The notes: generated by a model from the sequence alone, not told the origin. Positions 39,401 through 62,349 are shown, numbered from the stretch's first letter. The stretch: 64,000 nucleotides of DNA from Octopus bimaculoides (GCF_001194135.2 NC_068981.1:134749906-134813905); one strand, 5' to 3'. Numbers and translations are program-made.

Positions 39401-39822
39401 TGTCAATAGAATATAGTCTGCAGTAAACTACACTGCAATATTATATCGCTATATTGTATCCATTCTTAATGGCTGAGGTTTCATTCTCTCCTGTACTTTA
39501 ACAGTTTTTAGCAATGTTCAGCAAAGCTTAAATAGGTATTCTTCTATTTAGATTTTAATAAAACTAGATCCATCTCAAAGCATCAAGGAGAATGAATTAG
39601 CTGAATTTGTTCTTTTAGCAGAAATAATTAAATGAAAATGTCCATGGACTTTGAAATTAGTTATTAATAAGTATTACAAGGTTTATTGTTTATACCAAAA
39701 TTATTAATGTATGTCATAAAAATTCAGAAACTTTGAGAGATTTGAAATAATTTGTAGATAAACCTATGAATAATAGTGTTTGAATATTGGGCTAAAAATC
39801 CCTTTGGACAGAAAAAGTCAAA

Positions 39823-40040
39823 AGCAGTGAGCTGGCAGTAACATTAGTGTTGGGAAAATACTTTGCAGTATTTCTACTAGCTCTTTACATTCTTTGTCAA
39901 ATTCTACTCAAGGTCAATTTTGCCTTTCATCTTTTCGGGCTTGATAAAATAAGTACCAGTTAAGCATTGAGGTCGTTGTAATTAACAAACCACCTCACCC
40001 TAAAATAACTGGCTTTGTGCCAAAATTTTAAACCATTATA
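39823..40040 (+). mobile_element. Family-A SINE
   Basis: gcagtgagctggcag head; caattttgcctttcatcttttcgggcttgataaaataagtaccag. Confidence 0.8.
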
Positions 40041-40043
40041 TTT

Positions 40044-40345
40044 AACACCATTCAAGCGTGGTCAATGCCAGTGCCGCCAGACTGGCTCCCATGCTGATAG
40101 CACATGAAAAGTGCCATACGAGTGTGGTCGATGCTAGCGACATGTAAAAAGCACCATTCAAGCATGGCTGATGCCAGTGCTGCCTGACTGGCCCACATGC
40201 CAGTGGCAAGCGAAAAGCACCTACTGCACTCTTGGGGTGGTTCGTATTAGGAAGGGCATCCAGCTGTAGAAACCTTGCCAGATCAGATTGGAGCCTGGTG
40301 CAGCCTCCTGGCTTGCCAATCCTCAAACTGTCCAACCCATGCCAA
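40044..40345 (+). mobile_element. RTE 3' UTR fragment with internal repeated units
   Basis: Repeated caccattcaagc(g/a)tgg..gatgccagtgc units followed by ttaggaagggcatccagctgtagaaac, as at 31904-32100. Confidence 0.8.
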
Positions 40346-41419
40346 TGGCAGTTTTGGCATGGTTGTGAAATTAATAAAAGAAATTAGAGTTTGTTATGTT
40401 AATGATTTTTATAAGGCACTAGTAAAGTAAGTGAAGTATTTCTAAATTTGAAGCAAAGCCAAGACACAGTCATGGCTTGCAGTAAGCTGTGATAAGTAAT
40501 TGTAATTAAGATTATCTTTTTAATGAAGTCTTCATTATAAGAAACTTCCATTCTACCAACAAGGTAACAACAGAATAGGTTTTCTCTTTAATTTAATGAT
40601 ACTAATCACATCTTTGGACAAAAATGTGTTTTTGCTACGCTTAAGTATATATTCTCATAGTAGTGAAAATAAAAGAGGTGATTTTATTTACTATATCAGA
40701 TGAAATAAAACTCTTGTTTCCATAGTTCTGTAGCCAATAAATGTCTAAAACTATTGTAAAATAATTCATGAATTACTAACTCAACTCATATTAACATGCT
40801 ACTAAGACTAATTGATTCCATACTACACATATCTGAAAATAGTGATTTTAAACACAAAATTAATTGTGATGGCAAGAGAATAATTAATTTTGATAATGTT
40901 TAATCAACGAAGAATTGAAACCAATTGTCATTGTAGATTCTAACTGAAAGACATCAGTAATATGTCTCATTAATATTTTTCACTCATTTATATATCATCA
41001 TGAATTTAGATTGCAATGAAAAATTCAGACATCTTTAATACTCTTTTGATATTAGCTGCTCACTTACTATATACTGGAATTGGTATGCAGGGCAAATAGA
41101 GTAATGTGTCTTGTTCAACATGTAAGCTGTATGATTTTAGTTTAGTGTGTCAATTTTTCCACTACAATATATCTAACAGCTAAATGGTATGTTATTTGCC
41201 TTATATAAGATGTTTTATTCCAACTTAGTCAGTCATGTTCAACTACACTTACAGTTGGTAGTTTTCAGCTTGCTGTGTTGTTAGCACACCAGGCAAAATG
41301 CTTAGTTTAAATTCTGAGTTCAAACTCTGCTGAGGTCAACATTAAGTTTCACATATTCCACTCTAACTAAACCAAACACATTACAAAACATAATGTTAGA
41401 TTGCATTATAATTATTTCA

Positions 41420-41630
41420 AATTTTTGCTACAAGGGCAGCTTGGGGGAGGGGGAGATGAATCGATTACATTGACCCCTGTGTTCAACTGGTACTTATTTT
41501 ATCAACCCCAAAAGATGAAAGGCAAAGTCAACCCTGGCAGAATTTGAACTCAGAACATAACAACAGGTGAAATACCGCTAAGCATTTCATCCAGTGTGCT
41601 AACAATTCTGTCAGCTCACTACCTTACTAG
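41420..41630 (-). mobile_element. Family-A SINE, antisense
   Basis: caactggtacttattttatcaaccccaaaagatgaaaggcaaagtc...ctgtcagctcactacc. Confidence 0.85.
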
Positions 41631-42005
41631 ATTATATAAAAATGTTCAACAAAACATGTCATTTGTACTAATACTAACTACTACTACTGCTGCTATTGTT
41701 ACTGCTACTAATACTACTACAGCTCTTATATGCTTTTGGTATTTTTCTTTCTAAATGTTAACAGTATCATGCACTAATTTGTAAAATGCACAGGAATGGG
41801 AATTTTATAAAACATGCTATTTAAGCAAGAGTAAATTACTTGTGAGTTTAGAGATTTATTATATGAGAGCTTGTGTTACTATGTTAACATAGTTTTTTCT
41901 TTTAATTATTAAAAATGTGAGATAATGCATATCTTTATAGTTATTACTTAAATCTGTTATAAGTGTGTGTAATTTGTACAATATATGTGTGTTTATGTGC
42001 ATGTG

Positions 42006-42041
<36 letters not shown>

Positions 42042-44411
42042 CATGTGCACTATATATATATATATACNNNNNNNNNNNNNNNNNNNNNNNNNNNNNNNNN
42101 NNNNNNNNNNNNNNNNNNNNNNNNNNNNNNNNNNNNNNNNNNNNNNNNNNNNNNNNNNNNNNNNNNNNNNNNNNNNNNNNNNNNNNNNNNNNNNNNNNNN
42201 NNNNNNNNNNNNNNNNNNNNNNNNNNNNNNNNNNNNNNNNNNNNNNNNNNNNNNNNNNNNNNNNNNNNNNNNNNNNNNNNNNNNNNNNNNNNNNNNNNNA
42301 CAATATACAGAACAAATCATACTTTTTCTTTTATATATATAGAATATACATACATATACATGAGATACAATGTCTTCTATTTTATGCACATATAGATTTT
42401 AAGAAATAACTTCAGAGCAGTTTCACATTGGTTTGATAATATTTCCTATCAGTTTCTCAGCTTCAAAGTAGGGGCAGAAGATGCATCAGAACTTCTTTTT
42501 CTTAATGAAGTAGTAAGAGAGTTTATCAGAACTTTTGGACTCTTCAATAAAAATCATCAGGGCTGGTTATAGGGGCTTTATTATGTTAATATATCATTTT
42601 TTTTTTTTTTTGGTTGTTCTGGAGATTCACTATTTACACAAGAGTTTCAATCTCAAGTGTGAAGTGAAAGAACATTAGTGTGTTACCCTCATCATTGACT
42701 ATATGCTTTAGTTTATGAAGATTTTATGATAAGATCAGGGCCATCATAACAGCATTACAGACTGCTGAGCAAAGCAATTCAATATGCTCCCTCTACACAC
42801 AACCTTGGTGTGCATAGATTAGCATGAGTTCCCTAGATCTGTGATCTCCTGAGCAATGGCTCAATTTGCCCTTACCTTGAGATACCAGTGAGATGAGAAG
42901 AAAGAGGACTTTCAGGACACCTAAGCAACCCACCCACCAAGATGGGTATGAGATGTTTTGGCACAACTATTTTGGTGCCACCTATTTGGCATTATTGATT
43001 CAATGCCTACATATTTGGCATCAGGCATTTAATGTTTCCCTTGTTTTAATATTCTTCTCCTTTTCTTTCTTACAATATATTTTTCTTTGTGCATGGAGAG
43101 AGGGAAAGAATTACCAGAATGTGAATGTTTGAATGTATTTACGACCTTTTGCATTCAATTAATAAATTGTAATCTTTCTCTCCCTCTCTCTCTCACACTC
43201 TTTCAAACTGTATGTGTATATTTCTGCGCATGTTTACCTCCAGCACCAATAAAGTACTGTCACCAAAATAAGCCAAATGTTCAGTCAACCATGCCAAATG
43301 ATAAGTGTCCGAACAGCTGCACCCACCCAATCACTTCATTCCATACTAAGATATACATACATATCAACCCTCACATAGAACTAGTTCACATCTATATCTC
43401 TCTAAAGAGAGTGACAAAAAAATAAGTATTTTTTAATGGTGTCAAATTTAATAATAATAATAATAATAATAATATAATGAGCTTGTTATAAGCCATACTC
43501 AGGTGAAAGGGGTAAGAGAGGGAACAGAAAGCAGCAATTAGTCGAGTAAAGAAAGACAGCAGTGAAAGATAAAAGTGCATTCACAGTACATAGATTAAAA
43601 CATGAAAAGACAGGAAAGTGAATGATGTAATTTTTTAGTAACATTCTTGCTTTTGATAAAGATATAGTGTTCGAAATTAACATATGCTCTACCACTTTCT
43701 TTTATGTACACTTTCTATGTTAAGGATACACACATTTATAGCTTATTACATATTTCACTTGATGTTACACATCAAAAATAAGCTACAACTTCTACATAAC
43801 CAATATTTTACAAAGGAATTAGGTCACTAATTAAGAACTGTGATTCATTTTAGAATTACCAGAATGTGGATGTTTGAATGTATTTACGACCTGTTGCAGG
43901 CCTAATCCATCAAACAAGATGGTATTATTATGCTAGACTTTTTCTGCAGTTCATCTGCCTCAGTGAGATGTTTGAATTCCAATAAAAAAAACTGAAAAAA
44001 GTTAATGAAACATTAACTCTTTTATACTTAGGCAAATCACACAAAAACTTATGTAATTATCTACATTACTATTTTACCTCACTTTTTAAGTAACAACAGT
44101 TTAGATAGATAGTTTTCGAAAGAAATGTGTTGAATGGGAACCATCATCCTTTCTTATTTCTCTAAAAAACATTTTACATGTTGTGGTCAATAATCGTTAA
44201 TTTTCTATCACCTCAACAACACATTAATCATATATCATCATGATAGATGATTGGTTTCCATTCCTTTATCAGACTTCTTGTTTCATTTTTTTTGTTTTTT
44301 CTAATCACTTTCCAAACAGAAGTTGATAATTCTTTTTAAATTTCAGTCAGTTAATTCACTTCACTTTCTTATTTTCTGTCCTTCACTACCTCCATTATTT
44401 CTGGATATAAG

Positions 44412-44447
44412 GCGCAAATCCAGCATAGCCAGCATTGGTGCCTCCTT
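44412..44447 (+). CDS. 36-nt phase 2-2 microexon, (R)RKSSIASIGAS
   Basis: AG-free pyrimidine tract from 44351, aag acceptor, gtaagt donor; paralog at 54896 with synonymous differences. Confidence 0.8.
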
Positions 44448-44659
44448 GTAAGTACCATCTCTATCACTTGTCTTTCCAAACCCTTCATCCACCCAACTCT
44501 TTTCTCTTTTTTTTTTCTGTTTTCTAAGTCATGTATCCTATGAAAATATATCCCTTGATGTCTTATATCTGTTTGTTTGGAATTTTGCAAGTTTCATTCT
44601 CTGTGTTTTAGAGTATATTTTAAGTAATTTTGGCATCTAAGTGTGTGTGTGTGCGTGTG

Positions 44660-44700
<41 letters not shown>

Positions 44701-45238
44701 GTGTGTTTGCATGTGTGTGTGTACTGGTACATACACACACTCAGAAATCAAAATTAATAGTGGTTAGTCAAGTAAACATGTGTATGTCTTTGCTTGTATA
44801 TAAAATTAGATCTAGCTTCTTTTTCTTTCTTTTTTTTTGTGTGTGTGTGTGTGTGTGCATATATACTACAATTTACTCTAGTAATTGTTCAATATTCTTG
44901 TTTTAATTCTATAGAGTTCATAAACTGCCCAACTCCCATCCATGTCTTCCTAACATCGTTTGTACATCATGGTTTCTCTTCCTTATTACATATCAAGGTC
45001 AATTTGATTGATTGTTTCCTTACTATTTCTCTCGAAGTCCAATTATTGCCTGTGAAGTTCAAAACTAATCAAGCATCTTTCCTCTTGTTCCTTATTTTAT
45101 ATCAACCTGAATCCTGTTGACATCATGAATTCCCATTTTTTTTTTTTCTTTTCGCAAACATCTTGCTCCACAGTTCCATTTATTCATACTATTAAGTTTG
45201 TACCTACTAATTTCAATTTATTCAATGTTGGTTATTTC

Positions 45239-45295
45239 TGTAAAGACACTTTTTGTAAAGACATTTTTGTAAAGACACTTTTTGTAAAGACACTT
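45239..45295 (+). repeat. Four ~15-bp tandem units tgtaaagacactttt
   Basis: Seen directly. Confidence 0.9.
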
Positions 45296-46305
45296 CATAG
45301 TCATAAATAGGATGTTGAGTTTGATCTCAAACTAAAGCCTTAATATTTTGGGGCAATTGGTTTCTCTTTCAACTGATAAATATAAATTACCTGGTGAGAT
45401 GAGGGGACAATTTTATCACAAACTATTCTATTCTATTCATTTCTTATTTAACAGACCCTTCCTTTCATGCTTGATTTAACCCTTTAGCATTTAAACCAGC
45501 CAGAAGTGGCCCAAATATGCAACCAGTTTTATGTTAAAATCAGCTAGACCTGGCTTCTCACACCTACCCTACAATGTCACTCTAAAAATATATAATTACA
45601 TCACTGAAATTTCAAAGTTGCAAGGTAATGCATGGCTGATTCAAAACAATGATTTTGCATTGCTTCATGCTCTTGCTTAATGAGGCTGGGGTCATCCCAG
45701 GTTAGTGGTCCCAGAAATGTCATCATACATAGAGCCAACCAGGATTACCAGTGCTCTCCATCACTGGCAGTCCTGTGCCAGCCCCTCTGCATCTTAATAC
45801 ATGTTAAATCTGGACACTGTTCTTCAAGCATCTGACAGATTGCTTCAGTGTCCTCAATCATATCTAACTGTATTTGTCCTACAGATATGTTCCACTGTCA
45901 TTTCACTATATGGGATGGTGTTATAATGAACTTGTAGGTGCAGGATGGCCAAATGGATACTCAGTTCACTTCACAATCGCTATAAACTTGGTTTGACTCA
46001 TATCTTGTGAATGAAATTGGGTAGATGGAAACTACAGAAACCTATCAGATAGATTCAGTCATATCACACTGTGTTATGCTGATTCTATCTGTAAATTACA
46101 TTAAGGGTACATGTGTCTGTAGGAATTTTAACCGCATACGTGTTGATGCAATGAGCCTGGTGGTTCACTTGATCTAACAACTGAAAATTCCTGGTTGGAA
46201 ATCCTGATGTGAGACCCATTACAATGAGACATTATAATGATAATTCAAGTAACCCTTTTAATACACCTGAGACCCAAGACGATCTTTAGTAATATGATAT
46301 ATATA

Positions 46306-46346
<41 letters not shown>

Positions 46347-47092
46347 TAAATTAAAATTTATTTTGATAATTAGTGTAAGAGCTCTTTGGTAAGATAATGT
46401 TCTGAACACCAGTTTGATATAAAAAGAAATATAATAGCTAATTGTAGTGTGGAAAATTCCTGTTAGCCATATTACAACCAATAAACGTTTAAGTTAATAG
46501 CTATTGTGTGTCTCTGAATGACTAACATGTGCCTCCCATGCTTTGATCATTTTAGTTTCAACACACTGTTTCAGACCAAAACACTTTCCATGCAAGGACA
46601 TCTCTGTAACAGTTAATTATTTGACTAAATCTCTCCATTATTTTTATTGTTTTCAAAACAAATTGAAGCATTTTTATTAAGAATATGACCATGAAAGTGT
46701 TATAACACTTTCTGCAATAGCAAAAGTTACTTCTCCAGAGTTGTTTATAGCTGAATATTATTGGTCAAAAATAAAGTTACAATAATGTCTAGTATCATCT
46801 CATCTCCATCCCCTTGCCCAAGGCATTCCAGCTTTAGCCACACAAGTTAAATAGGAATGGTTTTTCAGATCTTTTATGTAAACAATAACCTCCTTGCTTC
46901 TAATGAACATGAGTGATAACATCTAAGCCTTTTTAAGCCTAATTTTCTATATTTATAATTTCACTGAAACTTCTTTGTAGATGGATTGATGTGTGTGCCC
47001 TAGCATGGCCACAATCTAATGACTGAAGCAAGTAAAAGATAAAAGATATTTGTATATATATATATATACACACACACATACACACGTGTGTA

Positions 47093-47163
<71 letters not shown>

Positions 47164-48099
47164 TATGTATGTTATATGAACACTAAATTTAGATATGATA
47201 CATTGAAATGGATTTGCACTAAATGATCTTTGCATAACATTTACTTTATTTACCATGGGAAAATGGTAAATGTTTCTTTAGTGAAAACAAAACTAATTTA
47301 TGATCACTTATTTTTAGTCGAGTATTATGAGATCTGTAGGATATTTTTACACTTTGATCTTGATTCGAAGCTACTGTTCACAGCATTAAAGAATATATTA
47401 TTCTCCTAATCTTATTATCTTCATTATTTCATCATTGTTTGAGAAAACATGTTTGTTTGTTTGTTGTTTTTATGTCTATAATTTATTTTTCATAAAACAA
47501 TACATCAATACTCCCATGACATTAGTGTAAGAATAATTTTCATCTCCAACTTGTTCCTACTAGTTTCACTGGTGTGTGTATTTTCTTTTTATTTCATTTC
47601 CATTTGATTTATGAAATAGTTATTTTAATTGTCACTAAATTAGCATAGCCCATTCAAATTACCAAAACTTTCTTATCACAGAGACTTCATCCTTTGGATA
47701 CTCTGTTAAAGTATTAAGTCAAATTCGACCCTTTTCTTTCTATCTTCTTATGTTCTTTTAATATCTGAATATCTCAAATTTGATATAAACAACTACTTCC
47801 TGAAGTATTGTAGAACATTTATCGAACACTAAAATAAAGGGAAAGCAATTTGTAGAAACTATATATCTTAGATTTACAGTCTGATTTGTATATCCTTAAC
47901 AAAGCATTTTCGAAACCTCAAGCATGATATATTGGATTATTTGTGTGCGCAAGTTCATTTATCCAGATTACAGCACATACTAGACTAAAGTTTGGAGTTT
48001 GAAAATCATTAGGACACAAACAAAATTGTTAAATTCAAGATTTATGAGGTCTAATCAAAAAAATATCAGGACTGTTACTATGGTAACAGAGCTAAAATA

Positions 48100-48500
48100 T
48101 GCAGAGTGAAGCCACTTGGCACAGATTGACCTTGAACTCTGTCATGCATGCACACTAAGTTATAACATTCTTGCTCTTGCTTGGCAGTAAAGTGTGTAGA
48201 GCATAATCATCTCAAAAAGATGATCGGGTTTCAGCTGTGCAGGATCTCATTGATTGTATCAAGAAAGACAAAAACTTATTGAAAATAGTCATAATGGGTG
48301 ATGAATCATGGGTCTATGACTAATGACCCTGAAACCAAGGCAAGAATCAAATCCCACTTGAAACGAACAAGATTTCAAGACATCAAGGAAATCTAAGAGA
48401 ATGGAATGAAGTAACTACTCATTATCCCAAAAAAAAGGAGTTCCAGTAATATTTCCAATCCATGTAAATATTACTGGAACATTACCAAGACCTTTGACAA
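48100..48500 (+). mobile_element. Internally deleted mariner transposase remnant
   Basis: QKDDRVSAVQDLIDCIKKDKNLLKIVIMGDESWVY..DPETK joined to LKRTRFQDIKEI..IPKKEFQ. Confidence 0.8.
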
Positions 48501-48516
48501 TATACCATGCTTGAAA

Positions 48517-48875
48517 GGCAGTGAGGTGGCAGAAACACTAACATGCCGGGTGAAATGCTTAGTGGTATTTTGTCTGTCTTTACGTTCTGAGATCAAATTC
48601 CGCTGAGGTCGACTTTGCCTTTCATCCTTTCAGAGGTTGATAAATTAAGTACCAGTTGCATACTGGGGTCAATCTAATCGACCCCCCCCCACTCCCCAAA
48701 AATTTCAGGCCTTGTGCCTAGAGTAGAAAAGAATATTATATTAGGCAGTGAATTGGCAGATTTATTAGAGCATTTGATTGAATGTGTTGTATTAATTCTG
48801 ACCTGCTGTGCTCTCAGTTCAAATCCTACCAGGTTCAACTTTGCCTGTCTTCCTTTCAAGCTTGATAATAAAGTA
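48517..48875 (+). mobile_element. Two tandem family-A SINEs
   Basis: ggcagtgaggtggcagaaac head with gtcgactttgcctttcatcctttc, then a second ggcagtgaattggcag head at ~48743. Confidence 0.85.
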
Positions 48876-48884
48876 GGCTCTGCA

Positions 48885-49053
48885 GTGGCTGTGTGGTAAG
48901 AAGCTTGCTTCCCACCACACAGTTCAGTTTCTGTCTACCTAATTCATTCAAGTCTTTGGTCATCTCAGGGCTATAGCAGAAGAATAACTAAGGTGCCACA
49001 TAATGAGATGGAATCTGGTTGAGAAACAAACTTCTTACCACACAGCCACACCT
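48885..49053. mobile_element. Fold-back family-B SINE structure
   Basis: 30-nt head fragment on + (48885-48914) facing an antisense copy whose head ends at 49049-49053. Confidence 0.75.
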
Positions 49054-50709
49054 AATATGTTAACAAATATAGAAACAAAAATTTAATAAGCAGCAATGTA
49101 AAATTTCATTGTTTTTATAACAATTAGGAGGAATTCATTCCTATGTAGAAGATGTTGACTTAAAATACATTTATTTACAATAGAACTAAAGGAACAGAAT
49201 TGTAAGTTGGACACTCATTCTATGAATAAATTATATTAAATTTAATAAATTCTAAAAGATCAACAGCATGGAAATTGTCTATTGTCAGTTTGTGTAATCC
49301 ATTATGACTACAACACCTGGGATAGCTCTTCTAGATTTTTCCCTTCAATTCTTCTTAAATGCATAAAGAATATTGATTAGTGTATTTATTTACAAGCCAC
49401 TAACATACTGATTGATGAATCTTATTCAGTATAATGTGAGACTCATTCTCACGTCTGAGAATCTTAGTTTTCTCCTGATTCAGTGGTTCCTCCATGTTGA
49501 TATTCTCATACGAAACAAGCAGGAACAAAGATGGCAACAAAATACTGGCTGTAGGTATGATTGTTGTTGCATCTTGTATTCTTTATGCTTTTCTTCAACT
49601 TCCTTTTGTCAGAAAAGGTCGGTTTCAGTAGTGATAGAGTTGGAACAGATCTGGCCTTAGTTTCTCACAATTTTGTCTAAATTTTAGCCATTTTGAGGGT
49701 CTTTTTAATGGCAAAGAAGACATCATAGAGATCTTTTACTGGTAATTAATTCACTAGAAAGAATTTAATGAGGAAATCTCTAGTCTTCATTCTAACTACA
49801 TCCTGACCACCACCACCACCTCTTCTATAGCCCAGGTTTCATGGTGGTGGATTCTATGCTTTGGCTGTTGGTTTTTCATTGACAGCATTGTTGGTTATGT
49901 AACCCTCCCATTTTGATGTTTAAAATGACACGGCTTTTCTTGATTGAAATGCTCTAGCTTTTTTCTTTTTTTTTTTTTTTGATACTCCAACAATTAAACA
50001 ATTAATTACCCAGTATGAGATTATATGGAAAAAAATTTTTTATGCTAACTATCAACTTATAATTAAAAGTTTACTCAGAAGAGAGATTAATCAATATCTA
50101 TCCTACAGATTAGTCCCTAATTCAGATAGAGCCCTCATCTTGGATTGTCTTCCATCTCATAGGTTTAAAATAATTTTAGAAATATAATTGTACATTAAAA
50201 AAACAATGTCAAAATAGTCCTAAGTTTTGCTTTAAGCTACCTGCTATGGTTGTAACGGCAATAAAAGAATTTATCTATGTTCTATTATGATCTCAGTTCT
50301 TATTTGTTACAAAACAATCGGTAGTCACACTTGGTTTTCTTTTATATTTTGGAGTGTTTGACTCTGCTGCTACATTGTACCATATACAGTGATTTTCTTT
50401 TTAAATTCATTCAAAATTCTTATATTATCATATTAAGTAAGCATAAAGAACCATCATTAATTACCAAAATGCAGATTATAAAACAAGTAGGAGAAAAAAG
50501 AAAAGTGTTGTTGGGAAATTATACATTGCCCTTTCTAGTTGAATAACAATAAGGAATCAATTTGATTCAATAGAAGTTGCCAGGTGAAATTCAAGCAAGT
50601 GTAACATGTCTTAACTAGCATGAGCACACATTAAAATTATTGTAAATGTGGAGAAAATATTAAATTTTTAGGTGGTTGTATGTAACAGTGTTGTTCACCA
50701 CAATCTCAG

Positions 50710-50817
50710 GTTATCTAGAAGAAGATTTAAATTTGTATAAGCAGTTGAAACAGGAAGAAGCTGAGGAAAATGCTCAAATATACATTGCTTCTTATGGATT
50801 AAAATCAAAGAGGACCA
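50710..50817 (+). CDS. Candidate 108-nt phase 1-1 exon (GYLEEDLNLYKQLKQEEAEENAQIYIASYGLKSKRT)
   Basis: ctcag acceptor, purine-rich open frame, weak CCA|gtaatg donor, symmetric length. Confidence 0.3.
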
Positions 50818-50867
50818 GTAATGCAATATTTATTTTCTATGTTTCATATTTTTATTTGTTGTACAGT

Positions 50868-51253
50868 TGTTGTTGCTGGCACTCCGTCGCTTACGACGTC
50901 GAGGGTTCCAGTTGATCCAATCAACGGAACAGCCTGCTCATGAAATTAACGTGCAAGTGGCTGAGCACTCCACAGACACGTGTACCCTTAACGTAGTTCT
51001 CGTGGAGATTCAGCGTTTCACAGTGTGACAAGGCTGATCCTTTGAATTACAGGCACAACAGAAACAGGAATAAGAGTGAGAGAAAGTTGTGGTGGAAGAA
51101 TACAGCAGGGTTCGCCACCATCCCCTGCCGGAGCATCGTGGAGCTTTAGGTGTTTTCGCTCAATAAACACTCACAACGCCCGGTCTGGGAATCGAAACCA
51201 CGATCCTGTGACCGCGAGTCTGCTGCCCTAACCACTGGGCCATTGCGCCTCCA
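50868..51253 (-). mobile_element. Young family-E tRNA-derived SINE with (CAA)n tail
   Basis: Minus strand gtggaggcgcaatggcccagtggttagggcagc...ggtttcgattccc (A and B boxes); CpG-rich; 3' hairpin cgtcg-taag-cgacg. Confidence 0.88.
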
Positions 51254-51262
51254 CTCATTGTA

Positions 51263-51731
51263 CAGTAACCATTTGCCATATCGCGGTTCACCTATCACAC
51301 CCTCAGTACATCACGGATTTTTCTGGCTAACATATGTAAATCTATATCGTGGACTCCTCAGTGTATCACGAGTTTCTGCGGCCAATAGATATTTATATTT
51401 TTTTATATTTTAATTATTTCTGTGGTAAAATAAGCATTTTCATAACTAAAAATTAATAAATTAATAAATAAAAATACAGTACAGTACTGCACTGTATAAC
51501 ACATTAATTAAAATATATTGAAAGAAAATATGTAGTGTACCATAGATGAGCAAACAAAGAATCTCACATACTGTAAGGAAAACGAAACTTGCATTTATAA
51601 TAAAATTAATATATACAAATTAGAAAAACAATAGAAAAGATACACAGTGCAGTACTGTTTCTACTTCGCAGATTTTCACCTATCACAGGGAGTTTTGGAA
51701 TGTAACACCCATGATATTCGAGGGATTACTG
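51263..51731. mobile_element. Tigger/pogo-like non-autonomous DNA transposon
   Basis: TA flanks at 51261-62 and 51732-33; ends CAGTAACC / CAGTAATCCCTCG; internal ttcacctatcac repeated. Confidence 0.7.
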
Positions 51732-51985
51732 TATAAACTAAAGAAAGTTTATATATATTTTTGACTGAATTACATATAATTTTGTTGAAAAGACGTTTTT
51801 TTTTTCTTTTTATAAGTAAATGCATTGTAAGTCTATTCAGTTTTAAATAAACATGTATTTCTTTCAATGATTAAAATAGCTTATCTGCAAAATACTATTT
51901 TACCCTGATTATAAAATAGTGAAAGAAGTGAAACATTAATTAATCTTGGTATTCATGTGTGTGTGTGTGTGTGTGTACCTAGATG

Positions 51986-53408
51986 TACTGAGTCCACCAA
52001 AAAGTGTATACCTCCTTCGAGTAAAGAAGATATGTAGAAATATTTTAATACTGAATTTATTCAGACATTACACGATTAATATAAATAACCTTAAACCTCT
52101 ACAATTACAAGAGGTGCTCAAAGTGGTGGCCATTAGCTTTTAGACACTTATTAGCATGGTGAACTGCTGTTTAGGCAATGTTAACCAAAGTGTCCAGTGA
52201 GATTACTACAAATATTGTTTCAATTTTCTCCTGGAGAGCAATCAGTGTAGCCAGTTTTCTGTGATATATGACATCCTTTAGTGTGACTCATAAGTAAAAG
52301 TCTGCAGATGCTAAGTCAGGAGAATTCAACCATACTTCTTTGTCCCATCCAGGTTAATTCATATATCTTGGTAGTAGTCTAGAAGTACACCATATTGAAA
52401 GAAAAGTTCATCATTTCCATAAAATGTGAATGGACATGCATAGCATGTCTAGGTACACTTGACCAGTGACAGTACCTTCAAAGCAAAATGGTCCCATTAA
52501 ACTTGATGACACTTTACACAATGACTGCTTTGTCCACATGCAAACAAGGATTTTCTGGTGCTCAGTAAACACAAATATATCAGTTCACTGTTCCATTTAG
52601 CTTAAATTGTGCTTCATCAGATCACACAACTGTCCTCACAAACTCTTTTTCCTCACCTACCATGTGTTGAAATCACACACAAAACTTGATTCTTTGATTA
52701 AGTTCATCGTTATTAATTGCATGTAATAATCTTGAGGTGTAAGCTTCTCACTTAGCTCTTTTAAGAAAGCACCGTATTCTTGTACTGCTTATTCCTGTCT
52801 CATGTGCACATAGTATGGTAGACTTCTTTGGTAAATGTTTGAAATATTCCAACCCCATAACCAAAGAAGCAGCACTTACTACTCTACGAAGTCTGATAGA
52901 TTTTTCCCTTTCACACATCTTACACAGTGTCATGTGTTTCAAACTGACCACAAATTTATGAAATCAACAGGTGTGTTGGAGGTTCTCTTCCAAACTCATG
53001 CCTCCATTGTTGTTGAATATCAACATCTTTCTCAAATTTGAAATACCACTTCAAAATGGTCTTACATTCCTTAAACAACAGCCATACCTCTATTACTTTG
53101 TCACAGTTGCTCACAATAACATCAAGAAGTCATAAGAAAGTTTCTAGCTTTTTTAATCTCAAAATAATGCCCATTGGCTATTTCATACATTAACAATTGA
53201 TCAAGTGCAACCTAACTTTCTCAATATCACACCTTAACAGCAGTAAAAATAATATTTTTAAAATGAAAAATTTTTTCATTAAAATTTAGAAACAATTTTT
53301 TTTTTAATGCCAACCATATTCAAATAGGCTAGAAAAGGCATAAAAGGTTAAAGGTAACCTTTTTTAATTCCATGAAGTGTGTATAAACATTTTCTGGCAT
53401 ATTCTGCA
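51986..53408 (-). mobile_element. Decayed Tc1/mariner-superfamily transposon with transposase pseudogene (~52117-53110)
   Basis: PKKST..CAHETGISSTRIRCFLK, SDEAQFKLNGTVN, MGPFCFEGTVTGQVYLDML, WMGQR..SPDLASADFY, KANGHHFEHLL*; degenerate terminal inverted repeats at 51986 and 53408. Confidence 0.82.
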
Positions 53409-53421
53409 CATATATACAAAA

Positions 53422-53473
<52 letters not shown>

Positions 53474-54895
53474 TTACATAATGCTACTTGATCAACACCT
53501 AATACTGTTGTTCTTTCTATTGTTGTTCGATCTCATATTGAACACCATTTTAATTCCTACCTTGTGTGGGGAGGTGGGGTTGTGTGTCTGTCTCTGTGGG
53601 TATTTTTTTTTTTTTCAATATTCATCACTGTTGAACAAAAACATTAACCACCCACAAAATTCATAAACTTCCAGGCTTAATGTCAGTCATTGGTTCATTT
53701 CAGTATCATTTATCAATCTAATATAAATTGTGGAAGCAAGATAAAGTAAACTAGGTTTGAAAAGAAAAAAAATTCTTCATACATTGTCCTTAGATTCATG
53801 GATGAATCCCAGAGGAACAAGTGTTAGTTTAGTTAGATTTCAATTTGCTGCATTTTGCATGATTGGTTCAAAATTGTGTCTGTTAGAAAGTATCTGCTCG
53901 GACTTAGGAAATTTTCTGTTTATTTTTGTTTTCCTACCTTTAATGTTCACAACATTGTTCATATATTACTCTGTGTCTGTTATCCCCTGTTTCTCTGATA
54001 TATTTAAACCTCTGTGTGTCTGTATCCCAAAACGTATTATTTCTTTTAATTCTTTTAAAAAGTCTTCTCTTCATTTTCCCCCTACACTATGAGCATTCCT
54101 CATTATAAATCATGCAGGTATATTCCCTGCACTTTGGAGCATGCTTTATATTTTGTATTTGTACAGCTGTAACGAATCACTATTCTCTTGAACAGATGCT
54201 GTATAAAATAACACATTTATGAACAGTTTTTCAATTGTTTTGTATGCTTGACTTGAGAGCCAGTATCCAATAATTGCCACAATCAGACAAAGATGGTTTC
54301 TTTAATTAGAGCTCTAACATTTCAGTTTGTTTTAAATAATGAATGTGACTCCTAATATATGTTCTTTTATCTATTCATTTATTTGTTCATTTAATCAATG
54401 TAAATCTATTTGTTTATGAATTACATAAATTATTTATACTACATATATACACATACATATGTGAATCTTCTTATACATTATTGACATTATTGTAAATCAT
54501 CCTGAGGCTATGACATATATATTAGAAAAGATATTGGCAAAATATTGGCAAGATGCAACTATATATATTACTGTTATGGATTAAATATCAGCATTTCAAT
54601 AAATACTAGTTAACCTTCTAATTTTAATAAATATTAATAACCCACAATAAATATTAATACACTTAATGCTAAATCTTACTACTGCCATCCCTAACAGCCA
54701 ACTTACTTTCCATTAAAAGCCCATAAGTCATAACACACTAACTCTATTTACTTCATTAATCATTCTTTCTAAATCAAAATTGTACACTTTTTTTTTTGTT
54801 CTCATTGTTGCTATTTCATTTCTTCTCAATTTTCATGCTTTTTGTCATTCATTTATACATTCAACCATTGCTTCATTACATTAATCTGTATTTAG

Positions 54896-54931
54896 GCGCA
54901 AGTCCAGCATATCCAGCCTGGGTGCATCTTT
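54896..54931 (+). CDS. 36-nt phase 2-2 microexon, (R)RKSSISSLGAS
   Basis: 166-nt AG-free zone (54728-54893) with ACTAAC at 54737-54742, tttag acceptor, gtaagt donor; paralog of 44412-44447. Confidence 0.8.
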
Positions 54932-57294
54932 GTAAGTATCTCATGTCTCCTCTCCCTCAATCATTAGCTGAGAACCCACCTCTTTTTTTGCCTTTTATCA
55001 ATATATAATGTTAGTATCTTTATCTTTTTAATGTCCTAGTATTGTACAAGTTATGTTAATTATCTTTTAATTTATGCATTACTGAATGCATTTAGTATAC
55101 CACATTTTACTTACATAAATATAAGTAATTATATGTGTATGTGTATATAGATAGCTAGATAGATATTCAGGTATAGATGTACAACATACACACACACATA
55201 CATAATCTGTTTTACAATTTCTCACCAAATAGTCAAACAGAATAATCGGTGGATATTTGGTTAAGTGGCTGCTTGAATAACTAACAGATGGGGAAAAGCA
55301 TGCTAATATGTGGGGAAAAGCATGCTAATATGTGGGCCAATCTTCCAGGATTGCAATAATGATGTCCAATACCACACAAGAGAATGATAATGTCAGATGA
55401 TGCCAAAATCACCTTGCATATTCAAATTGTTTGGATAAGTCATATCTCTGCTGAAACTATGAAATCAGTGTCAATGATGTTATTAAAAAATATCAGATTC
55501 TAGTCTTTCATTCAGTTAAGTTCACGTGCTTTTTGTGGGATTTTTCATCTATTTTGGTATGTATGGGGGAAGAGAGAGGGAGAGCAAAAGAGAGCTTTAT
55601 GTACACACACACATATATATATATATATATATGGTATTTTTATGTGAGCTTAAAGCTTATGTCGATCACCATGCAATGACTAAGCTCTCGACAGAAAAAA
55701 GAAGGCTTAGTGTTGACTAGCAGAAGAAAGAGTACTTGATGCCATTGTTTCGTTTAATAATATTATTTTGGTCAAGTCAGTCTCTTGCTACTCTGAGTTT
55801 TGCTGTGGATACACTGGGTCTTCAGGCAAAGTACAATTTATCAATATATATATATATATATAGTTTTAGGGAAAATAACCAATTTTCAAGAACTCATCAA
55901 TGAAAATCCACTATCACATATAGAAAAATTAATAATTAAAAGCACAATAAATGAGTATAATATAAAGTAAAGTAAATATCATAAGATAAATATAATAAAA
56001 AGATTACCCGTGTTTCATAACCAATTTTCAAATAGAAAAGAAATTTAAATCGATTAAAATCAATTGAAATTATCGAAAATAAGTTCTATTCAAAAATATA
56101 GCTACTCGTCAGATCGTAAGTAGAACAATAATTAGATATATATCTCAACCAACAATAAGTACCAAATGAATTAATATGAAATACTTATTATNNNNNNNNN
56201 NNNNNNNNNNNNNNNNNNNNNNNNNNNNNNNNNNNNNNNNNNNNNNNNNNNNNNNNNNNNNNNNNNNNNNNNNNNNNNNNNNNNNNNNNNNNNNNNNNNN
56301 NNNNNNNNNNNNNNNNNNNNNNNNNNNNNNNNNNNNNNNNNNNNNNNNNNNNNNNNNNNNNNNNNNNNNNNNNNNNNNNNNNNNNNNNNNNNNNNNNNNN
56401 NNNNNNNNNNNNNNNNNNNNNNNNNNNNNNNNNNNNNNNNNNNNNNNNNNNNNNNNNNNNNNNNNNNNNNNNNNNNNNNNNNNNNNNNNNNNNNNNNNNN
56501 NNNNNNNNNNNNNNNNNNNNNNNNNNNNNNNNNNNNNNNNNNNNNNNNNNNNNNNNNNNNNNNNNNNNNNNNNNNNNNNNNNNNNNNNNNNNNNNNNNNN
56601 NNNNNNNNNNNNNNNNNNNNNNNNNNNNNNNNNNNNNNNNNNNNNNNNNNNNNNNNNNNNNNNNNNNNNNNNNNNNNNNNNNNNNNNNNNNNNNNNNNNN
56701 NNNNNNNNNNNNNNNNNNNNNNNNNNNNNNNNNNNNNNNNNNNNNNNNNNNNNNNNNNNNNNNNNNNNNNNNNNNNNNNNNNNNNNNNNNNNNNNNNNNN
56801 NNNNNNNNNNNNNNNNNNNNNNNNNNNNNNNNNNNNNNNNNNNNNNNNNNNNNNNNNNNNNNNNNNNNNNNNNNNNNNNNNNNNNNNNNNNNNNNNNNNN
56901 NNNNNNNNNNNNNNNNNNNNNNNNNNNNNNNNNNNNNNNNNNNNNNNNNNNNNNNNNNNNNNNNNNNNNNNNNNNNNNNNNNNNNNNNNNNNNNNNNNNN
57001 NNNNNNNNNNNNNNNNNNNNNNNNNNNNNNNNNNNNNNNNNNNNNNNNNNNNNNNNNNNNNNNNNNNNNNNNNNNNNNNNNNNNNNNNNNNNNNNNNNNN
57101 NNNNNNNNNNNNNNNNNNNNNNNNNNNNNNNNNNNNNNNNNNNNNNNNNNNNNNNNNNNNTACAGACATATATATATATATACATATATATATGTATGTG
57201 TATGTATATATATATATATATAAATAATATATTCCTCTATACATGATCATACAAAACCCCCTTTTTTGTATTTATTTTTACTCACACACACACG

Positions 57295-57328
<34 letters not shown>

Positions 57329-57342
57329 CAGACATATATATG

Positions 57343-57378
<36 letters not shown>

Positions 57379-57487
57379 CATATATATGTATGTATATATA
57401 TATATATATGTATATTAAAATTATTCATATATACATATTTACAGACATTCACACATATATACACACCCATACATATATATACATATT

Positions 57488-57664
57488 TACAGACATTGAG
57501 CAGAACTTACTTGCAGGTATTGGTAGTGCAAATCAGAGGTGCAATCTGTGTGGGTGTTTTTTCAAAACACTGTCTGGTTTAAAAAGCCACATCAGACGCC
57601 ATGAAAGGGCTAAGGTGTAGGTGCAGGAGGTGGTCAAACTCTGTTTAAGGAGTAGACAACCACC
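57488..57664 (+). mobile_element. 3' end of a (TA)n-associated element encoding a C2H2 finger
   Basis: CNLCGCFFKTLSGLKSHIRRH...*, then caggaggtggtcaaactctg..taaggagtagacaaccaccatatat; homologous to 63543-63890. Confidence 0.75.
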
Positions 57665-57736
57665 ATATATGTATATATATATACATGTATATATATACAT
57701 ATATATATACATAGATATATATACATTTAAAAAAAA

Positions 57737-57998
57737 TTTTTTTTTTTATTATAGTTTCAGCTTAGAGCTGCGGCCATGCTGATGCACCGCCGTGTTGCTA
57801 CACTGTTATTACAGGGAGCCTCTTACAATTTGTGGCACTTGGTGAAGAATGGAGTTTGATTTAGCAACCCTCTTTTGCACCTCCTGCCGCGAGGTAGGTT
57901 CATCTGGGACTCTCGACAGGAAGAGGTCCAGCTTTGATTTAAAAAGCCCTACATCTACTTTGTGCAGGTTCCTCAGGCTCTTTGGGAGAATATTATGT
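57737..57998 (-). mobile_element. CR1/L2-type LINE 3' end
   Basis: Open HNILPKSLRNLHKVDVGLFKSKLDLFLSRVPDEPTSRQEVQKRVAKSNSILHQVPQIVRGSL* (stop 57810), short 3' UTR, A-rich tail. Confidence 0.85.
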
Positions 57999-58011
57999 AT
58001 GNNNNNNNNNN

Positions 58012-58053
<42 letters not shown>

Positions 58054-58177
58054 TATATGTGTGTGTGTGTGTATGTATGTATATATTATATATAATAATA
58101 TATTATATATATATAATTGAGTTTTTACATGTAATTTTGGATTTTGTCCCTAATATTATTATATATATATATATATA

Positions 58178-58332
58178 TGGTAGTAAACTTGCTTCCCAAT
58201 GATATGATTCCAGGTTCAGTCCTGCTGCGGGGCACCTTGGACAAGTGTCTTTTTACTATTGCTTCAGGCTGACCAAAACCTTGTGAGTGAATTTGGCAGA
58301 TGGAAGCTTAAAAGAAGCTTGTTGTATACATG

Positions 58333-58363
<31 letters not shown>

Positions 58364-58612
58364 ATGTATATATATGTGGAGGGGGGGGGTCTGTGTGTGT
58401 CTTCATGTCTGTGTTTGTCCCCCACCACTGCTTGACAGTGGTGCTTGGTGTGTTTACATTCCCGTAACTTAATGGTTTGGCAAAGAGACCGATAGAATAA
58501 GTAGCAGGCTTTAAAAAAAAGTACTGGAGTTGATATGTTTGACTTAAAATTCTTCAAGGCAATGCCCCAGCATGGCCACGGTCTAATGACTGACACAAGT
58601 AAAACTAAAAGA
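58178..58612 (+). mobile_element. Family-B SINE
   Basis: gcaccttggacaagtgtc through gccccagcatggccacggtctaatgactgacacaagtaaaa. Confidence 0.88.
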
Positions 58613-60195
58613 GATAGATAGATAGATCAATAGATAGGTAGACAGGCAGACAGATGTGATCCTATTTATTTAAATCTCTTGCGACATATCCCTTAGTAGG
58701 TGCATATGTCATCACTCATGCACATATTCAGCTATTACAATATATTGAAGCATACACAGCTATTCGGATATACATTCCAACAAACATAGAGTAAAATTTA
58801 TTAATATTACTATATTTTCTCCTTGTTATGTAAACAAAATTTTTACAAGTATATTTAATCACTTATATCATGCAAACCCTGTTAATCAAAAGTATCAAAT
58901 ATTGTCTTAATCTACTTCTGTGTGTATGATATCTACACATTACAATTATTATACTGAAATTAGAAAGCTATCTTCATTTAAGTCAGACATTTACATTGTA
59001 CAGTGGAAAATATTTTAAAGCAGATAAGTTTTTTTCTCTCTCTCTCTCACTCTCATTCTCTCTCTCTTCCTCTCTTAGTTTATTTCATCTTCCCTCCTGT
59101 CTTTCTAAAGTTTGGAAATATAACATGGAATTTACAAGCATATATTTATTAATTTTTATGGATTACAACACTATAATGTACCATGTCTGAGATGTATCTT
59201 TTGTTCTAGACGTTTTGCTCAGGTCAAACTATCTAAGGGAATTACTATTTTATACATTAATATATATTTTTTGTAGATCTTTGGAACATTGTTCCAAAAT
59301 ATTATTGTAGCATCAGGTCACAAACAATAGTTTCCATCAAGTTTGAACTTGCACCTATAACATTGAGTAATATGGCTTTAAGTTTCTTGTTTTCTAACAG
59401 TTGTCTTATAATAAAAATTTAGTTATATACATTTAGAAGTCATATAAATACTGATATCTTCTTTTGTGTTTTTTCCTTCTGTATTTCACATATTTTGACC
59501 TTACATATTCTGTCTTTTAATGACAAATATAATAACAGTCCTGTTATAAAGAACCTTTGCATAGTATGATGAAAATCTTTCAAAATAATAATTCATAACA
59601 TATTTTTACTTTAATTTGATTGGTTATTTCAAGGAATTGGTAATTTCCATTACATAATTTGTTTTAGTTGACTTTTCAAAGACAGTGAATGCTATTTTTG
59701 AAAAGAAAATTTAGAGAATTTAATGTATATTTGAAGAATGTTTTATAAAATATTAATACATATTGTGGCTAAAGGACTTCTGGCTCACAGGAGTAATAAA
59801 GTTAAATTATTAGGGTTTATTTCGGTTTTTTTAAACATTAATTCTGCATACACATTTAGATTTGTTAACATTTGTAATTTATGAAAATTGAATTCTCTTT
59901 GAAAATATACATGTTATAATTTCCAACAATAAAATACTTTGCTTTACTATCAAGCTATTTGAAATATTTTTGAAAGAGGTCTGCTGATAACATTCTAGAG
60001 AGTTTGTTTTAAAAAAATCATATCTAAAGTTTGGAACAATATCAAGTAATGTATAAATCTTGATTAATGGTCATAGTAATTAAATTGGTACTGTTTTATA
60101 TGTTCTATAGATATATACCTTTATATAGAACAAAATGGGATGTTATTCCATTTCTTGTATATTACTGGTCATCTGTTAATATAATTTGCTGGGTT

Positions 60196-60232
<37 letters not shown>

Positions 60233-62100: not shown

Positions 62101-62301
62101 TGTGACTGCATCAAAACAACTATCACAACTGTAGAAATTATTTGTTTCAAGTCTGTCTGTGTGTGTGTGTATGCATATATATATAACTGCAACTACAATA
62201 TCTTTATATATCTTATTTCTACTTACATTCTCTTATTTCCCTCTATATTCCCTGTCTCCTCCTTTTCCACAATAATTTGAACTCAAATATTTTCTCACAC
62301 C

Positions 62302-62349
62302 GTCTTTGATGAAGAGATATCCATAATATCCCAGAAAAAGCTGTAAGAC
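62302..62349 (+). ncRNA. Hammerhead remnant related to the 19875 ribozyme
   Basis: GTCT-TTGATGA-AGAGATATCCATAATATCCCA-GAAA-AAGCTG-TA-AGAC; C3U and helix III changes. Confidence 0.55.

What the first reader, a model, noticed from the sequence alone, without database searches (positions are those of the whole stretch)
44412..54931. Duplicated 36-nt microexons encoding a basophilic kinase motif
Seen: GCGCAAATCCAGCATAGCCAGCATTGGTGCCTCCTT and GCGCAAGTCCAGCATATCCAGCCTGGGTGCATCTTT, 10.5 kb apart, both AG/GTAAGT bounded. Three differences are synonymous (K, A, S) and the others give A/S and I/L, while the introns have largely diverged, which is the pattern of coding selection. Established: R-R/K-x-S is the PKA-type consensus. 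Inference: mutually exclusive or module-specific exons that change the phosphorylation sites of an unidentified protein.
Basis: partly seen in the sequence, partly recalled or inferred. Interest (0 to 1): 0.72.

Follow-up and report, generated by a model that had tools for sequence, protein, structure and literature searches.

The report
Tandem 36-base repeat exons, spliced together
The two 36-base sequences are real exons of one large gene. They are joined one after the other in the same mRNA, followed by a third similar exon, so they form a protein repeat of 12-residue units that each carry a kinase-type serine motif and are not either/or alternatives.

Summary
There are no other copies in the window. 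RNA-run contigs from three studies and two organism labels join exon A directly to exon B. B is then joined to a third homologous unit (…RRPSIASIGV…) that is not in the assembled window. One run also joins a 51-nt exon (13534-13584) to exon A across a 30.8-kb intron. All three introns split a codon after its second base, so units can be added or skipped without a frameshift. The peptide reads …HVQQRSELSTPILGGN-R-RKSSIASIGAS-L-RKSSISSLGAS-L-RRPSIASIGV…. This is an array of tandemly duplicated repeat exons that are included together, so mutual exclusivity is refuted. Contig depths in one run suggest that only about a third of transcripts carrying the 51-nt exon continue into exon A, so the array may be optional. 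Each unit fits R-[RK]-x-S-Φ, like Kemptide (LRRASLG), with a second serine at +3. Phosphorylation is inferred only. The gene could not be named: protein libraries, Pfam, PDB sequences and literature gave no match. It is a new member of a known kind, of moderate interest.

The parts
13534..13584 (+). 51-nt upstream exon (E51). It encodes (x)HVQQRSELSTPILGGN plus the first two bases (AG) of an Arg codon that exon A completes. The acceptor is tttcatag| and the donor is |gtatag.
   Evidence: a 1287-nt contig of run X31 (depth 20.3) ends with its last 51 nt matching exactly 13534-13584; a 58-nt X31 contig (depth 6.3) joins …GCTTTCCACACCAATCCTAGGTGGAAAC+AG to exon A. Sequence read; frame. Its 31-mers are held by RNA runs of many organism labels.
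13585..44411 (+). Intron of 30,827 nt in phase 2 (it splits AG|G), rich in transposable elements. No other exon is used between E51 and exon A in the joined form.
   Evidence: E51->A junction. Low, even pre-mRNA-like depth of 3-6 across 38460-44411 in four runs, with no spliced piece. Length.
44412..44447 (+). Repeat exon A, 36 nt. It encodes RKSSIASIGAS plus TT of the Leu codon that the next unit completes.
   Evidence: Use of the 3' splice site is shown (X31). Use of the 5' splice site is shown. The X29 contig ends exactly at 44447.
44448..54895 (+). Intron of 10,448 nt in phase 2 (it splits TT|G = Leu), starting gtaagt and ending atttag.
   Evidence: Direct A->B junction in contigs of X15, X32 and X31.
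54896..54931 (+). Repeat exon B, 36 nt. It encodes RKSSISSLGAS plus TT of a Leu codon that the first base (A) of unit C completes.
   Evidence: Both splice sites are used: contigs run A|B|C with B matching 54896-54931. The exon with its 12-nt flanks is held by runs of seven further organism labels.
54932..64000 (+). Start of the next phase-2 intron. The third unit (ACGTCGGCCCAGTATTGCCAGCATTGGTGT… = RRPSIASIGV…) is not in the assembled window. It lies beyond position 64000 or in an N gap (56192-57160, 58002-58011 or 62420-62865).
   Evidence: Loose ends behind 54931. No match in the window with up to 3 mismatches. N gaps listed.

Best explanation
The two 36-mers are consecutive exons of a large + strand gene with very long introns. 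They belong to an array made by tandem exon duplication. Each 36-nt exon encodes one 12-residue unit, L-R-[KR]-x-S-I-[AS]-S-[IL]-G-[AV]-S. The splicing order shown is E51 (13534-13584) -> A -> B -> C, plus at least 48-51 further nt. All introns split a codon after its second base. The split codon reads Leu (TT|G or TT|A) between units and Arg (AG|G) after E51. Any number of units can therefore be included without a frameshift. The next steps are inferred, not shown. The array probably forms a serine-rich, likely disordered linker. Each unit offers one strong site for a basophilic kinase (R-[RK]-x-S-Φ, as in Kemptide; fits PKA, PKG and Aurora, and loosely CaMKII). Each unit also has a serine at +3 that a primed kinase such as CK1 could use. 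The number of sites would be set by how many units are spliced in. Contig depths in one run suggest that only about 30% of E51-containing transcripts go on to exon A. That would make the array, or part of it, an optional cassette.
For: The following is shown.
- Exact coordinates and splice motifs.
- A->B->C in single contigs of X15 (organism A), X32 (organism C) and X31 (organism C), from three different studies.
- E51->A junction. E51 boundaries.
- Frame: A and B differ by 3 synonymous and 3 replacement bases. A and C differ by 3 synonymous changes plus AAA(K)->CGG(R) and S->P. The chance of so few amino-acid changes is 0.055 (A-B) and 0.017 (A-C).
- Similarity between the loci stops about 20 nt outside the exons.
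- Not a repeat family: only two copies in the window even at up to 11 mismatches, one contig per run at the exons, and depth of about 3-10 against thousands on SINEs.
- Conservation: 31-mers of E51 and of exon B with its flanks are held identically in runs of many organism labels.

Optional use is inferred from X31 depths. E51 has depth 20.3. Its last 30 nt have depth 41.5, so the branch contigs sum to about 21, but the E51->A contig has only 6.3, and there is no depth just past the E51 donor.

The kinase motif rests on established knowledge of the PKA consensus R-R-x-S/T-Φ and of Kemptide (LRRASLG).
Against: - The gene is unnamed, and no protein in any library matches the peptide. There is no independent evidence that the peptide is made.
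- All spliced evidence comes from low-depth assembled contigs (depth 3-6), not from raw reads.
- Three deep raw RNA runs of organism A, each sampled at about 6%, gave no read on exon A.
- In X15 and X32 the contigs that carry A-B-C still carry about 82-85 nt of unspliced upstream intron. That intron has an in-frame stop. Some of these molecules are therefore incompletely processed pre-mRNA.
- The estimate of optional use rests on unitig depths. The alternative partner of E51 was not seen, because microsatellite matches swamped the loose-end table.
- Nothing here tests phosphorylation, and the motif is short and common.
Confidence: 0.62

Rival explanations
1. A and B are mutually exclusive tandem-duplicated exons. 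Each mRNA carries one or the other, giving isoforms with slightly different phosphorylation sites.
For: The two exons are homologous and have the same length and phase, which is the usual signature of mutually exclusive pairs (background in PMC9741552 and PMC5740500). Contig depths hint that exon A is not in every transcript.
Against: A is joined directly to B in single contigs from three runs, three studies and two organism labels. Including both keeps the frame (36+36 nt), so nothing enforces exclusivity. A third homologous unit follows B in the same contigs.
Confidence: 0.04
2. The exons are real and spliced in tandem, but the repeat does not act mainly as a kinase substrate. The small-residue unit with hydrophobic positions 1, 6 and 9 could instead be a spacer or elastic linker, a docking repeat for a partner protein such as 14-3-3, or a weak membrane-binding repeat. 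The basic pair would then be incidental or electrostatic.
For: The same splicing evidence applies. The most conserved part of the three units is S-I-[AS]-S-[IL]-G rather than the basic pair alone. No family or structure matches, so nothing constrains the function.
Against: The basic residue at position 3 is kept through a three-base codon change, AAA->CGG. The serine four residues after the Leu is invariant, and the residue after it is always Ile. That is the exact geometry of a basophilic kinase site. With a 12-residue period the hydrophobic positions rotate 120 degrees per unit on an ideal helix, so they form no single amphipathic face (own calculation from the sequence).
Confidence: 0.2
3. 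The junctions are splicing noise. On this view, cryptic exons are used occasionally in nuclear pre-mRNA of a long intron, the products are non-productive, and there is no protein-level role.
For: Depths are low (3-6). Contigs in X15 and X32 retain the upstream intron, which has an in-frame stop. There were no reads in three sampled raw RNA runs and no matching protein in the libraries.
Against: Three homologous units keep the same length, phase, open frame and motif with synonymous differences, while their introns have diverged beyond alignment. The same junctions recur across studies and organism labels. Exon B with its splice sites is kept base for base in many organism labels. In X31 the fully spliced E51->A form (depth 6.3) exceeds the unspliced form (4.7).
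Confidence: 0.1
4. The 36-mer is a fragment of an interspersed repeat or transposable element that happens to carry splice sites.
For: The window is full of SINE, LINE and Penelope-like sequences.
Against: There are only two copies in 64 kb even at up to 11 mismatches. The similarity is limited to 62 nt. One contig per run lies on the exons, with depth 3-10, whereas SINE segments reach thousands.
Confidence: 0.02

Closest known systems
Arrays of symmetric repeat exons made by tandem exon duplication, such as the titin PEVK exons, nebulin repeat exons and the 54-nt collagen exons (from general knowledge, not tested here)
   Same: One exon encodes one protein repeat unit. All exons have the same length class and the same intron phase. 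They are spliced consecutively, and the number of units can in principle vary by exon skipping without a frameshift. The introns have diverged while the exons are kept.
   Different: The units here are much shorter (36 nt, 12 residues). The motif is a basophilic kinase site rather than an elastic or structural repeat. Only three units were seen, plus about 50 nt more. The introns are very long (10-31 kb). The host gene is unknown.
Mutually exclusive tandem-duplicated exons (tandem duplicated exon substitution; PMC9741552, PMC5740500)
   Same: The origin is tandem exon duplication. The copies are adjacent and homologous, with equal length and phase.
   Different: The defining behaviour, one copy per mRNA, is contradicted here because A and B occur together in single contigs. 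Mutually exclusive pairs replace a structured segment. These exons add repeat units.
Regulatory regions with several PKA sites, such as the CFTR R domain and the MyBP-C M motif, and the model substrate Kemptide LRRASLG (from general knowledge)
   Same: Several R-R/K-x-S-Φ sites lie in a serine-rich, probably disordered segment. The unit L-R-[RK]-x-S-[I] matches Kemptide position for position from Leu to the hydrophobic residue after the serine.
   Different: Those sites are irregularly spaced inside ordinary exons. Here the sites have a strict 12-residue period, one per exon, each with a conserved second serine at +3. No phosphorylation data exist for this protein.
Alternative cassette exons and neuronal microexons that insert kinase sites or short interaction motifs (PMC1904267; PMC8797185)
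   Same: These are short in-frame exons flanked by long introns that encode a short linear motif. There are signs of partial inclusion and of slow splicing of the flanking introns.
   Different: Known microexons are usually single and not tandemly repeated. Tissue specificity could not be assessed because samples are coded. A UGC motif upstream of the 3' splice site is present only for exon B, at -27.

Membership tests
Mutually exclusive tandem-duplicated exons | Adjacent homologous exons of the same length and intron phase | tested here: met
   Both exons are 36 nt, 30 of 36 bases are identical, and both are flanked by phase-2 introns.
Mutually exclusive tandem-duplicated exons | Exactly one of the copies is present in any mature mRNA; they are never joined to each other | tested here: not met
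   A is joined directly to B in contigs of X15, X32 and X31.
Mutually exclusive tandem-duplicated exons | A mechanism that enforces exclusivity, such as a frameshift on double inclusion, incompatible splice sites or too short an intron | tested here: not met
   Double inclusion adds 72 nt and keeps the frame. The intron between the exons is 10,448 nt with standard GT-AG ends.
Tandem arrays of symmetric repeat exons (one exon per protein repeat) | At least three homologous exons of equal length and phase, each encoding one repeat unit | tested here: met
   Units A, B and C encode RKSSIASIGAS, RKSSISSLGAS and RRPSIASIGV. Only the first 30 nt of C were seen.
Tandem arrays of symmetric repeat exons (one exon per protein repeat) | The units are spliced consecutively into one open reading frame | tested here: met
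   E51-A-B-C reads through as …HVQQRSELSTPILGGNRRKSSIASIGASLRKSSISSLGASLRRPSIASIG… without a stop.
Tandem arrays of symmetric repeat exons (one exon per protein repeat) | A variable number of units through exon skipping | tested here: inconclusive
   In X31, E51 has depth 20.3 and the E51->A contig has depth 6.3, with no unspliced depth after E51. The other partner of E51 was not seen.
PKA-type (basophilic) kinase substrate site | Sequence consensus R-R/K-x-S/T followed by a hydrophobic residue | tested here: met
   RKSS-I, RKSS-I and RRPS-I in the three units. After E51 the junction codon AG|G adds a further Arg, giving RRKSS. The consensus itself comes from general knowledge.
PKA-type (basophilic) kinase substrate site | The serine is phosphorylated by the kinase in vitro or in vivo | not testable with these tools
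   No phosphoproteome or assay is available, and the protein matched nothing in the libraries searched.
Neuronal microexon programme (Srrm4/eMIC type) | Very short in-frame exon (27 nt or less by the strict definition, 51 nt or less by the loose one) | tested here: inconclusive
   The 36-nt and 51-nt exons are in frame. They meet the loose limit but not the strict one.
Neuronal microexon programme (Srrm4/eMIC type) | UGC-containing enhancer close upstream of the 3' splice site | tested here: inconclusive
   TGC is present at -27 for exon B only. There is none within 60 nt of exon A or E51.
Neuronal microexon programme (Srrm4/eMIC type) | Neural-specific inclusion | not testable with these tools
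   Run, sample and study names are coded, and no tissue information is given.

The most novel reading that the evidence does not exclude
The array is a lineage-specific set of microexons that is missing from the protein libraries searched here. Each microexon adds one Kemptide-like PKA site with a primed serine at +3. Regulated splicing would then set how many cAMP-responsive phosphorylation sites a (probably neuronal) protein carries, which would make the region a phospho-rheostat tuned by splicing.
Probability: 0.2. Interest if true: 0.6.

Novelty: new member of a known kind. Interest (0 to 1): 0.4.

Why it matters
Tandem exon duplication is usually discussed as a source of mutually exclusive isoforms. 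Here the duplicated exons are stacked, building a periodic string of kinase-site modules, one per exon, separated by introns of 10-31 kb. If inclusion is regulated, the cell could set the number of phosphorylation sites by splicing. That is a simple and testable way to tune a signalling response. In practice, these 36-nt exons match nothing in very large protein libraries. They are therefore probably missing from current gene models of this genome, and they show how small repeat exons in giant introns escape annotation. The case is still modest. The architecture is of a known kind, the gene is unnamed and the function is inferred.

Tried and rejected
- Raw RNA reads. Three 2026 runs of organism A (about 6% of each read) gave no read on exon A or its flanks. 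On a 2-kb stretch, (TG)n matches swamped the output.
- More units in the window. A fuzzy DNA search (up to 11 mismatches), a six-frame motif search for S[ILVM][ASTG]S[ILVM]G, and a scan for AG|N36|GTRAG open exons each found only A and B. Unit C is absent from the window.
- Other exons. GC islands, stop-to-stop ORFs and a phase-aware splice scan gave only transposable-element fragments and unconvincing candidates. Four nuclear-RNA-like runs over 38460-44450 showed flat intronic depth and no exon.
- Naming the gene. Every search came back empty:
  - an exhaustive HMMER search of 1.84 billion representatives with E51-A-B;
  - Pfam and PDB sequences;
  - literature string searches and topic searches.
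  These negatives are soft. Isoforms cluster at 90% or 50% identity, so the representative may lack the exons.
- Exact-protein look-up of a transposon ORF to identify the assembly: not on record.
- The last read-laying run on E51 confirmed the exon, but flanking microsatellites filled the loose-end table. The next upstream exon and the alternative downstream partner were therefore not seen.
- Colinear duplication of the introns was rejected: only SINE matches were found.
- An alternative first coding exon starting upstream of exon A was rejected. The in-frame upstream sequence has a stop and no ATG (sequence).
Full report
**Observation**

GCGCAAATCCAGCATAGCCAGCATTGGTGCCTCCTT is at 44412-44447 and GCGCAAGTCCAGCATATCCAGCCTGGGTGCATCTTT is at 54896-54931. 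Each follows an AG (…ggatataag| and …ctgtatttag|) and is followed by gtaagt. They differ at 6 of 36 bases. Only the frame starting at the second base gives similar open peptides, RKSSIASIGAS and RKSSISSLGAS. Of the other two frames, one has a stop in A and the other changes 6 of 12 residues. From the window's base composition, a second 36-mer within 6 mismatches is expected about 1e-8 times. A search allowing up to 11 mismatches on both strands finds only these two copies. Similarity between the loci covers the exon, about 18 nt of the acceptor region and 7 nt of the donor (62 nt at 82%). The remaining ±1.5 kb share only microsatellites, and the introns as a whole share only SINE copies.

The codon argument alone is weak. 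Six random substitutions would give two or fewer amino-acid changes and no stop 5.5% of the time.

**Are they exons?**

Yes. Contigs assembled from public RNA runs show the junctions.

- In run X15 (organism A) a 201-nt contig covers 44330-44447. It continues directly with exon B (54896-54931) and then with 47 nt beginning ACGTCGGCCCAGTATTGCCAGCATTGGTGT.
- Run X32 (organism C, another study) has a 241-nt contig with the same order. It holds 121 nt ending in exon A, then exon B, then 84 nt beginning with the same third sequence.
- Run X31 (organism C, a third study) resolves the assembly graph around exon A. A 58-nt contig (depth 6.3) joins …GCTTTCCACACCAATCCTAGGTGGAAAC+AG to the first base of exon A. 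An unspliced contig (depth 4.7) covers the upstream intron. A 153-nt contig (depth 5.3) joins exon A to exon B and runs on for 123 nt in all. An unspliced contig (depth 5.2) covers the downstream intron.
- The X29 contig stops exactly at 44447, as expected at a used donor.

The upstream sequence is in the window. …GAAGTGAGCTTTCCACACCAATCCTAGGTGGAAACAG|gtatag ends at 13584 and is preceded by tttcatag| at 13533. A 1287-nt X31 contig (depth 20.3) ends with its last 51 nt matching 13534-13584 exactly. That fixes both boundaries of this 51-nt exon, here called E51.

The introns are 30,827 and 10,448 nt long. The third unit is not in the assembled window. It lies beyond position 64000 or in one of the N gaps.

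**What the exons encode**

Joined, the exons read …HVQQRSELSTPILGGN-R-RKSSIASIGAS-L-RKSSISSLGAS-L-RRPSIASIG(V)… with no stop.

All three introns split a codon after its second base. The split codon is AG|G (Arg) after E51 and TT|G or TT|A (Leu) between units. The different first base of unit C (A, not G) is therefore silent. It would also stay Arg if C followed E51 directly.

Unit C differs from A by three synonymous changes (CGC>CGT, AGC>AGT, ATA>ATT), by AAA(K)>CGG(R) and by S>P. The chance of so few amino-acid changes from that many substitutions is 0.017. Keeping a basic residue through a three-base codon change is a clear sign of selection on the peptide.

The repeat unit is L-R-[KR]-x-S-I-[AS]-S-[IL]-G-[AV]-S, 12 residues, one unit per 36-nt exon.

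A and B are not mutually exclusive. They are adjacent units of one tandem repeat and are included together, with a third unit, in the same molecules in three runs. Nothing would enforce exclusivity: including both keeps the frame and the intron is long and canonical. The architecture is that of an array of symmetric repeat exons made by tandem exon duplication.

**Is the array optional?**

Possibly. In X31, E51 has depth 20.3. The last 30 nt of E51 have depth 41.5, so the contigs branching off its end sum to about 21. The E51->A contig has only 6.3, and there is no depth just past the E51 donor. About two thirds of E51-containing transcripts in that run therefore appear to join something other than exon A. 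The partner could be a later unit or an exon beyond the array. I could not see it, because microsatellite matches filled the output of my last read-laying run. This is an inference from unitig depths, not a demonstrated skipping event.

In X15 and X32 the A-B-C contigs still carry 82-85 nt of the upstream intron, which has an in-frame stop. The 30.8-kb intron is thus removed later than the downstream introns, or those libraries are rich in nuclear RNA. The even depth of 3-6 across 38460-44411 in four runs of the study that includes X15 supports the second reading. Three deep raw RNA runs of organism A, sampled at about 6%, had no read at exon A. Expression is low or restricted.

**Not a repeat family**

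Only one contig per run lies on each exon, at depth 3-10. The SINE segments nearby reach depths in the thousands. The 31-mers of E51, and of exon B with 12 nt of flank on each side, are held unchanged in runs of many different coded organism labels. That agrees with conserved exons. Because the labels are coded, I cannot say how distant these organisms are.

**Mechanism (inferred)**

Each unit matches the basophilic kinase consensus R-R/K-x-S/T followed by a hydrophobic residue. It parallels Kemptide (LRRASLG) from the Leu to the residue after the serine. This consensus is established knowledge of PKA specificity, and the same motif fits PKG and Aurora kinases and, loosely, CaMKII. A conserved serine three residues further on would suit a primed kinase such as CK1.

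With a 12-residue period the hydrophobic positions (1, 6, 9) rotate 120 degrees per unit on an ideal helix, so a single amphipathic face is unlikely. Together with the high Ser/Gly/Ala content, this suggests a disordered linker.

The most likely role is a periodic multi-site phospho-acceptor segment whose number of sites depends on how many units are spliced in. I put about 0.9 on the structural part (real, consecutive, in-frame repeat exons) and about 0.4 on the phosphorylation part.

**Gene identity**

The gene is not established. The following searches all returned nothing:

- two searches of 5.8 billion proteins;
- an exhaustive search of 1.84 billion cluster representatives;
- Pfam;
- PDB sequences;
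- literature string searches.

These negatives are soft, because isoforms that differ by small exons are collapsed into one cluster representative. Even so, they suggest that the exons are absent from the gene models in those libraries. The rest of the window looks like intron filled with transposable elements. No Rfam family reaches threshold.

**Comparison with known systems**

- It works like the repeat-exon arrays of titin PEVK, nebulin or collagen: one exon per unit, uniform phase and consecutive splicing. It differs in unit size and motif.
- It shares its origin with mutually exclusive tandem-duplicated exons (PMC9741552, PMC5740500) but fails their defining test.
- It resembles multi-PKA-site regulatory regions such as the CFTR R domain in content, but not in its strict periodicity of one site per exon.
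- It resembles signalling cassette exons and microexons (PMC1904267, PMC8797185) in size and context, but it is tandemly repeated.

**Verdict**

Mutual exclusivity is refuted and replaced by a co-spliced tandem array of repeat exons. The kinase-site function is plausible but untested, and the gene is unnamed. This is a new member of a known kind, of moderate interest.

Noticed in passing
Its 31-mers are held unchanged by RNA runs of at least eight other organism labels and by an 'invertebrate metagenome' metatranscriptome.
   Followed up: yes
window 44324-44411: The contigs that carry the A-B-C junctions in X15 and X32 both begin at 44327-44330, inside the upstream intron. The unspliced X31 contig begins at 44324. 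This could be chance at low depth, delayed removal of the 30.8-kb intron, or a transcript start. It is not resolved.
   Followed up: partly
window 3616-4221 (-): A 201-aa ORF has a GIY-YIG nuclease domain (Pfam PF01541, E 8e-5). It is probably a remnant of a Penelope-like retroelement and lies next to an inverted repeat (3322-3650 against 4263-4583, 90.6%).
   Followed up: partly
window 57501-57694 (+) and 63514-63706 (-): An inverted pair of segments, 84.5% identical, each encodes a single C2H2 zinc-finger fragment below Pfam's cut-off. It is probably a dispersed repeat rather than a gene.
   Followed up: partly
window 31257-31680 (+): An ORF with the motif …RLRWYGHVVRM…GRGRPRKTW… resembles the C-terminal tail of a LINE reverse-transcriptase ORF. 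It has no Pfam hit and is interrupted by an N gap.
   Followed up: partly
window 24329-25174, 35689-36266, 41405-41643, 48514-48744, 61648-61880: There are many copies of a SINE-like element of about 200 nt (74-84% identical to each other). RNA-run contig depths on such segments reach the thousands, so these elements are abundantly represented in RNA libraries.
   Followed up: no
window 4901-5389, 8295-8356, 31681-31903, 33404-34174, 42068-42299, 56192-57160, 58002-58011, 62420-62865: Eight N gaps total 3,202 nt. The gaps downstream of exon B could hide the third repeat exon.
   Followed up: no
window 44639-44705: A (TG)n microsatellite 200 nt downstream of exon A attracts thousands of unrelated RNA reads. 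It produces spurious 'joints' and apparent base changes in read-laying output.
   Followed up: no
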